Source: Anolis carolinensis (Eukaryota). From it: a stretch of DNA of 64,000 nucleotides. The notes under the pieces were generated by a model that was not told the origin of the DNA, did no database searches, and saw nothing but the letters and a program-made list of their open reading frames with translations. Made by a program: the position numbers and the translations under genes. How positions within the stretch are numbered: position 1 is the stretch's first letter; every line of letters begins with the position of its first letter. Positions 7,587-10,729 of the stretch are shown here, one piece after another. The stretch spans positions 5,704,001-5,768,000 of the forward strand of contig NC_085847.1 in the NCBI RefSeq assembly GCF_035594765.1. The letters run 5' to 3'.

Positions 7587-9158
7587 ATGGATTACGCCAA
7601 AAAGTCGCTGTCCCTTCTCTCCCCGCAATCCCTTTCCAAGTAAGCCTTTGCTTGGCATATTGTTTTGCCTCCCCTCTAGGAATCTCTAGGTCCTCCAGTG
7701 CAAGGTTAGGCTTAGGAGGGGCCTCCGTTGATGGCTCTTCTTCTCATGTCCCAGGTGCATCTTGGCAGTGGCTCCTCCTTCTCCGCCGAGGCCCCGCCCC
7801 TTCCGGGTGACCAACCACGAACGCTCAGTGCGCAAAGGGATGGTGGCCGAGAGCCTGAGGGACCTCCAGGAGAAGGTGAGCCTGGGGAGGAGGGAAGGCG
7901 GGCGCTCAAGGGCCGGACCAACCCCAGGTGCCGCCTCTAAAGACCGTTGTGTCTCCTCAGGTGCGTCACGCCTGGGCCCTCTCCGGGGAAGTCCACCTGG
8001 TCTTGGAGGAGGACGGCACCAGCGTGGAGATGGAGGAGTTCTTCCAGACGCTGGAGGAAGGGGCGGTGCTCATGGCCCTGGCCAAAGGGCAGGAATGGCG
8101 GCCAGAGAAGGTGGGTGGCCATTGTGGCTCCTTGAAGGAAGTTCATCCACCGGACCCACACGAGCCTAGAGGACTCCTCTCTCTCTCTCTCTCGCTCCTC
8201 CCACTCAATCGGATGCCCACCTTCTACAAAAGGACCAACCAATGCCTAGAGAAGTCTTCTCTCTAGGAATTTTTCAGTCCTCCAGCTCAATCCCATGGTC
8301 ATCTTCCAGCGGAAGGGCCTACCAATGCTTAGAGAACCTTCTCTCTAGGAACCCTTCAGTCCTCCAGCTCAACTGACACTACTTGCACTTTCTCTGGCCC
8401 AGTTCTTTTTAGGAGCCAACCCAGGATTTTATCATAGTATGTTTATTGTATGTGATCTCATTTGTTTTATGACTTGTTTTATTGTTGATTGACTTGTTTT
8501 ATTGTTGTGTTTTTATATCGTCTGTTGCCTGGGCTTGGCCCCATGTAAGCCGCCCCGAGTCCCTTCGGGGAGATGGGGAGGGGTAGAAAAATAAAATTAT
8601 TATTATTATTAACTCTATGGTTGCCTACCAGTGCCAAGAGGGGTGTCCTCCTCCCTAGGACATCTCTCTGTCCTCCTTCTCAACTCAATGCTTTTCCTCC
8701 CTTTTCCGTCACAGGCACCCGGCTACCAGCTCGCGCTCTCCCAGAAGCCCCGGCACCGGATTGACGTGGCCCGGCTGACCTTTGACCTCTACAAGACCAA
8801 CCCTCGGGACCTCATTGGCTGCTTGAACATCAAGACGACGCTCTACGGGACGTACAGCATGTCCTACGACATGCAGTGCTACGGGGCTAAGAGGATGATG
8901 AGGTCAGTTGGACCAAAAGAAGAGGGTTGGCACTTACGGGAGCGTGGTCCGTGGTGAAGGTGATTGATCTCTCTCTCTTTCTCTCCTTTGCGACGCAGGG
9001 AAGCTCTCCGCTGGGCGCTGTTCACCATGCAGGCCACCGGCCACGTTTTGCTGGGCACTTCCTGTTACGTGAAGCAATTGCTGGACGCCACGGAGGAGGA
9101 GAAAGCGGAGAAGGAGGTGGCGTTGCTCGGCCTCTCGCTCCGGAAGATGCTCCTGTGA
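7587..9158 (+). CDS. CIDE-family lipid-droplet protein, CIDEC/FSP27-like, 223 aa; exons 7587-7639, 7755-7875, 7961-8110, 8715-8902, 8999-9158; AATAAA 9324-9329
   Basis: MDYAKKSLSLLSPQSLSK; CIDE-N RPFRVTNHERSVRKG...LVLEEDGTSVEMEEFFQTL; CIDE-C IDVARLTFDLYKTNP...EALRWALFTMQATGHVLLGTSCY. Closest to CIDEC; symbol withheld because the locus does not match CIDEC synteny. Confidence 0.93.
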
Positions 9159-10729
9159 TTCATCATTCAGCCATTCAATGGTGACGAGGGACTCACTTGA
9201 GCAGGCCTGGGCCAAAGTTGGCCCAAGCCTGCACAATAGGGAGCCATGGACTTGTTGGGATTCTTGTGCCTGCCTTCACTTGGAACTGTGTCTTGTAAAT
9301 ATTTATCTTTATCTGTATGCATTAATAAAAGTCCACTTTGTTAAACCATGGTGTTGCTGGGTTTTTTCACCCTTTGCTCTCAAAACAGTGGATGGAAGTG
9401 AGGGCTCTTGCTCCTGTTGTGTCCAGCAGTTGGTGGTGGTTAGTATACAGGCGGATTGGCAGGATCATGACCCGTAGGGTGGTGAGGTTTCAGAAGGGGT
9501 GAACCTTCCTCCTAGTTCTAAAGGGCCACTTGTAAGAACTTACAAGTGGTAGCAATGAAGGGTAGAGACCTGCAAGGGAGAGGATCCAGCTGTGATCAGC
9601 TGCAGAAAAGGGTGAACCCCCCTTGCGCAATATTCCAAAGGGGACGCCTGCCCTCGAGAAGGTATTGCATGGAACACAAAGACACCCTGGACTTGATCAA
9701 TATACTTTAATGATCAAAATAGACCAGAAAAATGCAGGGAAGGAAAAGGTGTCCTTGGTTCCATCTCGTCTTCCCAAATTCCTATGAATCTTCCCGAAGA
9801 TTGCCTTCTTGTCTTCCTGAATTTCCTCGAGCCTTCCCAAATTTCAATTCCTCTTCTCGAATGTGACCTTCTCATCTCCCTGAATAGCCTTTTCACCTTC
9901 CCAAATTCCTATCCATCCTGGAATATTGCCTTCTTGTCTTCCTAAATTTCGATTCTATCATTTCCTTGTCTTCCTGAATTTGACTTCCTTGTCCTCCACT
10001 TCCTCACTCATTTTCCTTCTTTATGAAACGCCCAAATTCCTGGAGAAGGGTTTCCTTAACAAACCGAACAACAAGCTGGTATTTGGATTCTGTATTATTA
10101 TGTTCAAAAGGAGAAGGCACGGAACGGTTGGGGATGATCATTGCGTTGTGCTTGAAATGTCATCGGATCGTCTCTTTTTACCGACAAGAAAAGGTTGTTG
10201 ACGGAGCCACGATTCTTCCTTGTGTCATAATTTCCGTCCGCCACAACATCGTCTACGATAGTTTTGTTCTACCGCAATAGCGATATCAAGGAGCCGAGGA
10301 AGGTGGCAATAATAACGCAGTTAGAAAACGACCAAATAAGTAACTTCACCGAAAGCGGCTACTGCAGCGGAGTGTAAACAATAAAACCATGTGTCGCAAT
10401 GGCGACATCTTCCTATGTCCTTTAACAACAGGCTGGTGCAATAAAGTCCAAATAAACAGGGATCCAATACAACGGAGGAGGAAAAATTCTTCACGTTTCC
10501 CCAAAAACAAGGGAGAGGGTGTCAAGGGGAACCATTCGTACAAATATATATAGATCTATATTCTCTCCCAAAGGAAAGGAGAAATAGGAAAAACGGTGGC
10601 CAAAAACGGAGTGCCGCCGTCATGCGCTATTACAAAGGTTAGCAAACAGTACAAAAAGGAGGTCCAAGGACAGGCGGCAGATTCGTTTCCGGCGTTGGGT
10701 TTGTGAGCGACTCTTCCGACCCGTTGGCT

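What the first reader, a model, noticed from the sequence alone, without database searches (positions are those of the whole stretch)
7587..9330. CIDEC-like gene at a non-CIDEC locus: candidate fourth CIDE paralogue
Seen: an intact, intron-containing CIDE gene (so not a retrocopy) with CIDEC-type N-terminus and CIDE-C domain, lying between DDT and NF2; its N-terminal linker is ~11 aa shorter than human CIDEC. Known: mammals have CIDEA, CIDEB and CIDEC (CIDEC at 3p25) and none at 22q; 22q12 and 3p25 share paralogue pairs (SYN3/TIMP3 vs SYN2/TIMP4). Inference: either a genome-duplication sister of CIDEC lost in mammals (an extra lipid-droplet fusion factor, possibly for reptile fat bodies or vitellogenic liver) or a translocated CIDEC.
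Basis: partly seen in the sequence, partly recalled or inferred. Interest (0 to 1): 0.7.

Follow-up and report, generated by a model that had tools for sequence, protein, structure and literature searches.

The report
Anole CIDEC gene, moved beside NF2
The gene is real, intact and expressed, but it is the green anole's ordinary, already annotated CIDEC (a fat-droplet fusion gene) sitting in a rearranged neighbourhood, not a lost fourth member of the CIDE family.

Summary
Observation confirmed. A five-exon, 223-aa CIDE gene lies at 7587-9158 (+), between DDT and NF2. All four GT-AG introns appear as spliced joints in RNA contigs of four runs from four studies.

Interpretation mostly not supported. 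The exon translations equal RefSeq 'lipid transferase CIDEC' of Anolis carolinensis residue for residue. It is the only Anolis CIDEC-like cluster among the listed hits of three large protein searches. In ML trees it falls inside the sauropsid CIDEC clade (97/97 and 99/98). A position at the root of all CIDEC is rejected without long outgroups (AU p 0.007), but not with CIDEA/CIDEB included (p 0.14). Its exact place within sauropsids is unstable because of a long branch.

The odd locus is probably not anole-specific: in a snake, CABP7 (by my recollection NF2's human neighbour) lies upstream of CIDEC. The short linker is shared with agamids and Lacerta.

dN/dS is about 0.1-0.2 and the CIDE-N dimer residues are kept, so it most likely works as a lipid-droplet fusion factor.

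Seen in passing: many lizards, though no anole in these searches, carry a second CIDEC gene tail-to-tail with the first. The scan has no earlier CIDE note on other DNA.

The parts
5431..5524 (+). Alternative upstream first exon of CIDEC (RefSeq isoform X2). It starts about 140 bp from the DDT start codon on the other strand, so the two genes probably share a bidirectional promoter. It carries a poly-C tract whose length varies.
   Evidence: A spliced joint from 5523/5524 to 7569/7570 (GT..AG) appears in one run. The first 37 residues of P0235 match the ORF at 5431. Indels of 2 and 3 nt at 5472 are seen in two runs.
7570..7639 (+). CIDEC exon 1. The acceptor for the upstream exon is at 7570, the ATG at 7587-7589, and the exon encodes MDYAKKSLSLLSPQSLS(K).
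   Evidence: (joint 7639>7755)
7755..7875 (+). CIDEC exon 2: the shortened linker and the first half of CIDE-N.
   Evidence: PF02017, 30.4 bits; joint 7875>7961
7961..8110 (+). CIDEC exon 3: the second half of CIDE-N, including the EEDGT acidic loop.
   Evidence: PF02017, 53.9 bits; joint 8110>8715
8715..8902 (+). CIDEC exon 4: the first half of the CIDE-C region.
   Evidence: 80-88% identical to squamate CIDEC; joint 8902>8999
8999..9336 (+). CIDEC exon 5: the rest of CIDE-C, the stop at 9156-9158, the 3' UTR, and AATAAA at 9324-9329.
   Evidence: contig of run X13 ends at 9336
4753..5292 (-). DDT, the upstream divergent neighbour. The ATG is near 5292; only the first two coding exons were located.
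   Evidence: MIF domain; only DDT chains among the PDB hits
10733..15677 (-). NF2 (merlin), the downstream convergent neighbour. Its stop codon is about 1.4 kb from the CIDEC poly(A) signal.

Best explanation
This is the green anole's orthologue of CIDEC/FSP27. It belongs to the squamate copy that I call type A. Shown: it is a five-exon gene that is transcribed and correctly spliced, and it encodes a 223-aa protein with a CIDE-N domain and a conserved CIDE-C region. Inferred from the mouse Fsp27 literature and from conserved residues: the protein sits at contact sites between lipid droplets, its CIDE-N domains pair through a basic patch and the acidic EEDG loop, and neutral lipid flows from the smaller droplet to the larger one. 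Its place beside NF2 comes from relocation of the gene, or reshuffling of its neighbours, in the squamate lineage. The snake gene has CABP7 as its upstream neighbour, and CABP7 is by my recollection the gene next to NF2 in human. In the anole lineage a further break put DDT and CABIN1 upstream, and the tail-to-tail partner (type B) found in many other lizards was lost. The anole protein has changed faster than its relatives but remains under purifying selection.
For: Identity and annotation:
- All five exon translations match P0235 and P0265 100% ('lipid transferase CIDEC', Anolis carolinensis, XP_008117968/9).
- A. sagrei has a 223-aa orthologue, 207/223 identical.

Gene structure:
- The 5-exon structure with intron phases 2-0-0-2 is the CIDE family signature.
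- Exons 2 and 3 hit Pfam CIDE-N.

Phylogeny:
- Tree 1: inside sauropsid CIDEC (97/97*) and inside a 7-row squamate type-A clade (95/87*).
- Tree 2: sauropsid clade including the anoles at 99/98*.
- A root position is rejected (AU p 0.0067, delta lnL 43).

Sequence signatures:
- The anole has the non-B state at every site that separates type A from type B.
- It has the 'WR-P' residue seen only in squamate type A.
- Its linker deletion overlaps that of Pogona and Phrynocephalus.

Copy number:
- No other Anolis CIDEC-like cluster is listed in three searches.

Synteny:
- In the snake Ahaetulla, CABP7 exon 1 (34/37 identical to human CaBP7, PDB 2LV7) lies 53 kb upstream of CIDEC and is divergent from it.

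Expression and selection:
- All four introns are spliced in contigs of four runs from four studies.
- dN/dS is 0.10-0.23 against nine relatives.
- The mouse Fsp27 dimer residues R46, R55, K56, E86, E87, D88 and E93 are all kept.
Against: - The anole branch is long (0.5 against a median of 0.11) and its place within sauropsids is unstable.
- Tree 2 puts the anoles as weak sister (86/50) to all other lepidosaur copies.
- The AU test does not reject the anoles lying just outside all other sauropsid copies (p 0.32).
- With the CIDEA/B outgroups included, a position outside all CIDEC is not rejected (p 0.144).
- NF2 itself was not found within 10 kb of CIDEC in any other squamate locus, so the link to the snake rests on CABP7 alone.
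- That CABP7 neighbours NF2 in human is my recollection, not a tool result.
- The absence of a second anole CIDEC rests on annotated proteins, not on a scan of the genome.
- The RPUSD3-JAGN1 interval of this genome was not inspected.
- dS is saturated, so the dN/dS values are rough.
- The tissue of expression is unknown, because run names are coded.
Confidence: 0.8

Rival explanations
1. It is a fourth CIDE paralogue dating from the early vertebrate genome duplications: a sister of CIDEC kept at the 22q12-like paralogon and lost in mammals.
For: The locus is not the mammalian CIDEC locus. With CIDEA/B outgroups, the AU test does not reject the anole gene lying outside all other CIDEC (p 0.144).
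Against: The gene nests inside tetrapod, amniote and sauropsid CIDEC with high support. A root position is rejected when the long outgroup branches are removed (p 0.0067, delta lnL 43). It is 70-73% identical to squamate CIDEC against about 50% to CIDEA. No other CIDEC is listed for anoles. No comparable extra gene is seen in fish, frogs, turtles, crocodilians or birds in the same searches.
Confidence: 0.02
2. It is a younger hidden paralogue: a duplicate that arose on the sauropsid or lepidosaur stem, separate from types A and B, and was kept only in anoles while the usual copy was lost.
For: Tree 2 places the anoles as sister to all other lepidosaur copies (86/50). The AU test cannot reject a position outside all other sauropsid copies (p 0.32). 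Lepidosaurs demonstrably duplicated this gene: types A and B, and two tuatara genes.
Against: The long branch explains the instability. Tree 1 puts the gene with type A (95/87*). It shares the type-A-only 'WR-P' residue and an iguanian linker deletion. Type-A genes of snake and anole both lie in what I recall as the NF2-CABP7 region. This reading needs an extra duplication and several extra losses.
Confidence: 0.08
3. The DDT-CIDEC-NF2 adjacency is an assembly chimera.
For: None found.
Against: There is no gap between 1 and 28530. One RNA contig joins the exon next to DDT (ending at 5524) to CIDEC exon 1. Another runs from CIDEC exon 4 past 9800 towards NF2. Twenty runs from seven studies hold the stretch.
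Confidence: 0.02
4. It is a decaying or functionless copy evolving under relaxed constraint.
For: The branch is long, GC3 is 0.86, and the two Anolis species differ at 7% of residues.
Against: The reading frame is intact in two Anolis species. The gene is correctly spliced in four runs. dN/dS is 0.1-0.2. All dimer-interface residues and the MQATGHVLLGTSCY core are kept.
Confidence: 0.05

Closest known systems
CIDEC / FSP27 (lipid transferase CIDEC) of mammals, birds and other reptiles
   Same: It has the same five-exon, phase 2-0-0-2 structure and a CIDE-N domain. It has the same MDYAKKSLSLL N-terminus and a CIDE-C core (DLYK...NxK.TLYG.YS.SYD..CYGAKR...MQATGHVLLGTSCY..QLLDATEE). All Fsp27 CIDE-N dimer residues are kept. 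It falls inside the CIDEC clade.
   Different: The neighbours are DDT and NF2, not the RPUSD3 and JAGN1 that I recall for mammals. The linker is 7-10 residues shorter and the C-terminal tail about 4 residues shorter. The branch is about 4 times the median length. Four of the six lysines proposed to bind mouse Plin1 are not kept (K53, K75, K77, K115).
Squamate CIDEC 'type B' (RefSeq 'CIDEC-like' / 'CIDE-3-like' of geckos, cordylids, skinks, anguids and agamids)
   Same: It belongs to the same family and lies tail-to-tail a few kb from type A in Sphaerodactylus and Pogona.
   Different: The anole gene has the type-A or ancestral residue at every site that marks type B (AMK, FLS, SRC, TVF, RHDV, PEDF, NFK, YSISYD). 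No type-B exon was found anywhere in the window, and no type-B protein is listed for Anolis.
CIDEA and CIDEB
   Same: [quoted passage not shown]
   Different: They are only about 50% identical and form separate, strongly supported clades (100/99 and 100/97). The anole CIDE-N alone scores slightly higher against human CIDEB and CIDEA structures than against mouse CIDEC. This reflects the divergent mammalian CIDEC domain, not membership.

Membership tests
CIDE family (CIDEA/B/C) | N-terminal CIDE-N domain (Pfam PF02017) | tested here: met
   Exon 2 scores 30.4 bits and exon 3 scores 53.9 bits, both above the 23.5 cut-off. PDB hits are CIDE-B, CIDE-A and CIDE-3 N-domains at E 1e-17 to 1e-21.
CIDE family (CIDEA/B/C) | C-terminal CIDE-C region, found only in vertebrate CIDE proteins | tested here: met
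   Exon 4 alone finds 107 proteins, of which every one I looked up by name is a CIDE protein. Exons 4-5 are 80-88% identical to squamate CIDEC. There is no Pfam model for this region.
CIDE family (CIDEA/B/C) | Five coding exons with intron phases 2-0-0-2; CIDE-N in exons 2-3 and CIDE-C in exons 4-5 (Wu et al. 2008, PMC2426694) | tested here: met
   Exon lengths of 53, 121, 150, 188 and 160 nt give phases 2-0-0-2. The splice joints are seen in RNA contigs.
CIDEC subfamily (orthologue) | Falls inside the CIDEC clade, apart from CIDEA and CIDEB | tested here: met
   The CIDEC clade has 95/84* support. The tetrapod node has 99/97* and the sauropsid node 97/97*, both including the anole. It is 99/98* without outgroups. 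A root position is rejected at p 0.0067 but not with the long outgroups included (p 0.144).
CIDEC subfamily (orthologue) | Single copy in the genome, with no other CIDEC at the mammalian-type locus | tested here: inconclusive
   Only one Anolis cluster is listed in three protein searches. Only the best 120 of 335-597 hits were listed each time. The genome itself, and its RPUSD3-JAGN1 interval, could not be scanned.
CIDEC subfamily (orthologue) | Conserved synteny with CIDEC of relatives | tested here: inconclusive
   The snake gene lies next to CABP7, which fits the anole gene lying next to NF2. No NF2, DDT or CABP7 exon was found within 10 kb of CIDEC in Lacerta, Sphaerodactylus, Pogona, Phrynocephalus, alligator or turtle. 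The bird gene lies next to a FOG-family gene and the teleost gene next to a peptidase M16 gene.
CIDEC subfamily (function) | CIDE-N homodimer interface needed for lipid-droplet growth (mouse Fsp27 R46, R55, K56, E86, E87, D88, E93) | tested here: met
   All seven residues are identical in the alignment to PDB 4IKG and 4MAC. Their roles are taken from PMC3615468. This shows conservation only; activity was not tested.
CIDEC subfamily (function) | Localises to lipid-droplet contact sites and enlarges droplets | not testable with these tools
   This needs expression in cells.
Squamate CIDEC type B | Type-B signature residues and membership of the type-B clade (100/100) | tested here: not met
   The anole lies outside the type-B clade in both trees. 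It has the non-B state at all diagnostic sites.

The most novel reading that the evidence does not exclude
The genes called 'CIDEC' in squamates, birds and mammals may not be strict orthologues. The squamate gene is linked to NF2/CABP7, the bird gene to a FOG-family gene, and the mammalian gene (by my recollection) to RPUSD3/JAGN1. They could be old duplicates, from the amniote or sauropsid stem, sorted by reciprocal loss. In that case the anole gene would represent a lineage that mammals lack. A milder form is that the anole gene is a third lepidosaur copy, separate from types A and B.
Probability: 0.08. Interest if true: 0.5.

Novelty: already known. Interest (0 to 1): 0.25.

Why it matters
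As a candidate fourth CIDE gene it would have changed the textbook count of lipid-droplet fusion factors, but that reading fails. What remains is of modest value:
- It is a clean example of an intron-containing metabolic gene whose neighbourhood differs between squamates, birds and mammals.
- The anole copy has evolved unusually fast yet stays under constraint.
- Many lizards, though apparently not anoles, snakes or lacertids, keep a second, inverted CIDEC copy that I could not find described in the searchable literature.

That second copy, not this gene, is the place to look for reptile-specific fat-storage biology.

Tried and rejected
Spliced model. Exons were searched one by one by reference. 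The full-length steps used database proteins P0235 and P0265, which match the exon translations exactly. Exon codons were pooled inside scripts only for counting (GC3, dN/dS).

1. Relic of a type-B gene in the window. tblastn with nine CIDE proteins found only a 30%-identical, 43-aa match at 10979-11107 (-), E 0.04. It runs straight across the exon 2/3 boundary and lies inside the last NF2 intron, so I take it as chance.

2. Synteny by 10-kb flanks.
- Twelve locus look-ups were made; two found no record, including the anole protein itself.
- No DDT, NF2 or CABIN1 exon lies near CIDEC in any fetched locus of another species.
- CABP7 exon 1 was found only in the snake locus.
- There is no conserved non-coding DNA.
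- All-against-all tblastx was too noisy to use.

3. Naming the bird neighbours. PDB and protein-atlas searches gave nothing. Pfam then named one of them as FOG family. The acidic 997-aa gene remains unnamed; my memory suggests ZC3H18, but this is untested.

4. Literature. I found no paper on CIDEC relocation or duplication in reptiles.

5. Earlier notes of this scan. There is nothing on CIDE genes, CABP7 or the RPUSD3 side of JAGN1.

6. Gene conversion from CIDEA as the cause of the long branch. This is rejected: every exon compared (2 to 5) is closer to CIDEC than to squamate CIDEA.

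Full report
**What is there.** Reading 7000-10000 and translating the five candidate exons gives a complete gene on the + strand.
- The coding exons are 7587-7639, 7755-7875, 7961-8110, 8715-8902 and 8999-9158.
- Every intron is GT-AG, the phases are 2-0-0-2, and the product is 223 aa.
- This is the structure that Wu et al. 2008 give for all vertebrate CIDE genes (PMC2426694).
- Exons 2 and 3 each pass Pfam's cut-off for CIDE-N.
- AATAAA lies at 9324-9329.

Exons were searched one by one by reference. 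For full-length work I used database proteins that turned out to be identical to the model.

**It is expressed and spliced as modelled.** The runs that hold the stretch are stored as contigs. When laid on 5350-9800, contigs of four runs from four studies carry all four joints at the predicted GT..AG sites, and one contig ends at 9336.
- One run also shows a joint from 5524 to 7570. It links an upstream exon, which begins about 140 bp from the DDT start codon on the other strand, to exon 1. This is RefSeq isoform X2.
- That upstream exon has a poly-C tract with 2- and 3-nt length differences between runs. A 2-nt change there would put its ATG out of frame with the CIDEC frame.
- I therefore take the 223-aa protein from the ATG at 7587 as the main product.
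- Contigs cannot give expression level, and run names are coded, so the tissue is unknown.

- Upstream, on the - strand, is a MIF-family gene whose only PDB hits are D-dopachrome tautomerase, so it is DDT.
- Beyond DDT are exons that look like CABIN1. That name is from memory and has no domain hit.
- Downstream, on the - strand, is NF2. Merlin scores 82 bits against 47 for radixin, and the last exon ends [10 protein letters not shown] near 10733.
- The CIDEC poly(A) signal and the NF2 stop codon are only 1.4 kb apart.
- There is no assembly gap before 28531. RNA contigs bridge both sides of CIDEC. A chimeric assembly is therefore unlikely.

**What the gene is.**
- A search with exon 4 alone against 1.8 billion representative proteins found 107 hits. 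Every one I looked up by name is a CIDE protein.
- Word searches seeded with frog CIDEC and then Pogona CIDEC returned P0235, 'lipid transferase CIDEC isoform X2 [Anolis carolinensis]'.
- All five exon translations match P0235 at 100%.
- Its cluster holds the 223-aa isoform P0265 (XP_008117968.1), which equals the model piece by piece. It also holds a 223-aa A. sagrei protein that is 207/223 identical.
- So the window is Anolis carolinensis, and the gene is already annotated as CIDEC.

**Is there another CIDEC?** Three searches, seeded with frog CIDEC, Pogona type A and Pogona type B, each list the best 120 hits. Only this one Anolis cluster appears.

The same searches show that several other squamates have two CIDEC-like genes.
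- In Sphaerodactylus and Pogona the two lie tail-to-tail, 5.7 and 6.4 kb apart. I call them type A and type B.
- In Phrynocephalus they carry consecutive locus tags.
- In Hemicordylus, Elgaria and Lerista both lie on the same contig.
- Gekko, Eublepharis and Euleptes each contribute only a type-B protein to the listed hits.
- Type B forms its own clade at 100/100.
- No type B is listed for Anolis, snakes, Lacerta or Varanus.
- The window holds no type-B exon. The only hit is a 30% match at 10979-11107, which crosses an exon boundary inside an NF2 intron, and I take it as chance.

**Phylogeny.**

Tree 1 has 70 rows, uses LG+C20, and is rooted on CIDEA and CIDEB.
- The CIDEC tree follows the species tree.
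- The anole lies inside tetrapod (99/97), sauropsid (97/97) and a seven-row squamate type-A clade (95/87).
- Its end branch is 0.5 against a median of 0.11.

Tree 2 leaves out the long CIDEA/B rows and adds A. sagrei.
- The sauropsid clade including the anoles has 99/98 support.
- The anoles move to a weakly supported position (86/50) as sister of all other lepidosaur copies.

The AU tests give three results.

| Constraint tested | delta lnL | p-AU | Outcome |
|---|---|---|---|
| Anole outside all CIDEC, CIDEA/B included | 10.7 | 0.144 | not rejected |
| Anoles at the root of CIDEC, no CIDEA/B | 43.3 | 0.0067 | rejected |
| Anoles just outside all other sauropsid copies | 0.76 | 0.32 | not rejected |

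An origin in the early vertebrate genome duplications is therefore very unlikely. The exact place within sauropsids is not settled by the tree alone.

**Other characters favour type A**.
- At every site that separates A from B the anole has the non-B state.
- It has the arginine in 'GQ.WR-P' that is seen only in squamate type A.
- It lacks the one-residue deletion of turtles, crocodilians, birds and tuatara in 'DFIGCLN'.
- Its linker deletion removes the same 'SASMTQQLL' region that is missing in Pogona, Phrynocephalus and Lacerta.

**The locus.**
- In the snake Ahaetulla, the first gene upstream of CIDEC, divergent and 53 kb away, is a 216-aa EF-hand gene. Its first exon is 34/37 identical to human CaBP7.
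- In human, CABP7 is the gene next to NF2. That is my recollection, not a tool result.
- The orientations fit an ancestral order of CABP7(-), CIDEC-A(+), CIDEC-B(-), NF2(-). In anoles, type B would then have been lost, and a break between CABP7 and CIDEC-A would have brought in DDT and CABIN1.
- This order is inferred. NF2 was not found within 10 kb of CIDEC in any other squamate locus.
- Elsewhere the neighbours differ again. In guineafowl it is a FOG-family zinc-finger gene (PF25445, E 2e-14) and an acidic 997-aa gene. In a wrasse it is a peptidase M16 gene.
- CIDEC microsynteny is therefore poorly conserved in general. I could not determine the ancestral position.

**How it most likely works.**
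- dN/dS against nine relatives is 0.10-0.23. dS is saturated, so these values are rough. GC3 is 0.86.
- All seven residues that form the Fsp27 CIDE-N homodimer interface, and that are needed for droplet growth in mouse (R46, R55, K56, E86, E87, D88, E93; PMC3615468), are identical in the anole.
- The CIDE-C core is kept.
- I therefore infer a working lipid-droplet fusion and lipid-transfer protein.
- Four of the six lysines proposed to bind mouse Plin1 are not kept. These positions vary across sauropsids too.

**Verdict.** The headline interpretation, a fourth paralogue, is not supported. The gene is already annotated, so novelty is low. The tandem type-B copy in other lizards, seen in passing, is the more interesting lead.

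Noticed in passing
L002:10001-24853, L003:10001-26276, L004:10001-29622 (Sphaerodactylus, Pogona): Many squamates carry a second CIDEC gene ('type B', 225-251 aa) tail-to-tail 5.7-6.4 kb from the usual copy. It forms a 100/100 clade spanning geckos, cordylids, skinks, anguids and agamids. Tuatara also has two genes. No type B is listed for Anolis, snakes, Lacerta or Varanus. I found no paper describing it.
   Followed up: partly
L005:1-21110 (Numida meleagris): The guineafowl CIDEC lies between an acidic 997-aa gene and a FOG-family zinc-finger gene (Pfam CCHC_ZFPM2). These are neither the mammalian-type nor the squamate-type neighbours, so CIDEC microsynteny differs between mammals, birds and squamates.
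   Followed up: partly
L006:10001-82003 (Ahaetulla prasina): The annotated snake CIDEC 'isoform X1' spans 72 kb and overlaps CABP7 on the other strand. The real coding exons lie only at 76488-81964. The far upstream exon looks like an annotation artefact or a shared promoter region.
   Followed up: no
window 5431-5524 and 5472: The upstream first exon of CIDEC starts about 140 bp from the DDT start codon, so the two genes probably share a bidirectional promoter. Its poly-C tract differs by 2 or 3 nt between runs. A 2-nt change would put the 37-aa N-terminal extension of RefSeq isoform X2 out of frame, so the extension may not be a stable coding feature.
   Followed up: partly
window 9109: One run shows an in-frame 3-nt deletion in the GAG-rich stretch that encodes the acidic C-terminal tail (EEEKAEKE). 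It is probably a length polymorphism.
   Followed up: no
window 9336-10733: The 3' ends of CIDEC and NF2 converge within 1.4 kb. One unstranded RNA contig runs from CIDEC exon 4 past 9800, so the two 3' UTRs may abut or overlap.
   Followed up: no
window 6691-7286 and 8479-8627: Two high-copy repeats, one upstream of exon 1 and one inside intron 3, reach contig depths of thousands to over 100,000 in the RNA runs. They appear to be transcribed repeat families.
   Followed up: no
window 7756-8110 (CIDE-N): The anole CIDE-N alone scores slightly higher against human CIDEB and CIDEA structures (78 and 76 bits) than against mouse CIDEC (73 and 65 bits). It lacks four of the six lysines proposed to bind mouse Plin1.
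   Followed up: partly
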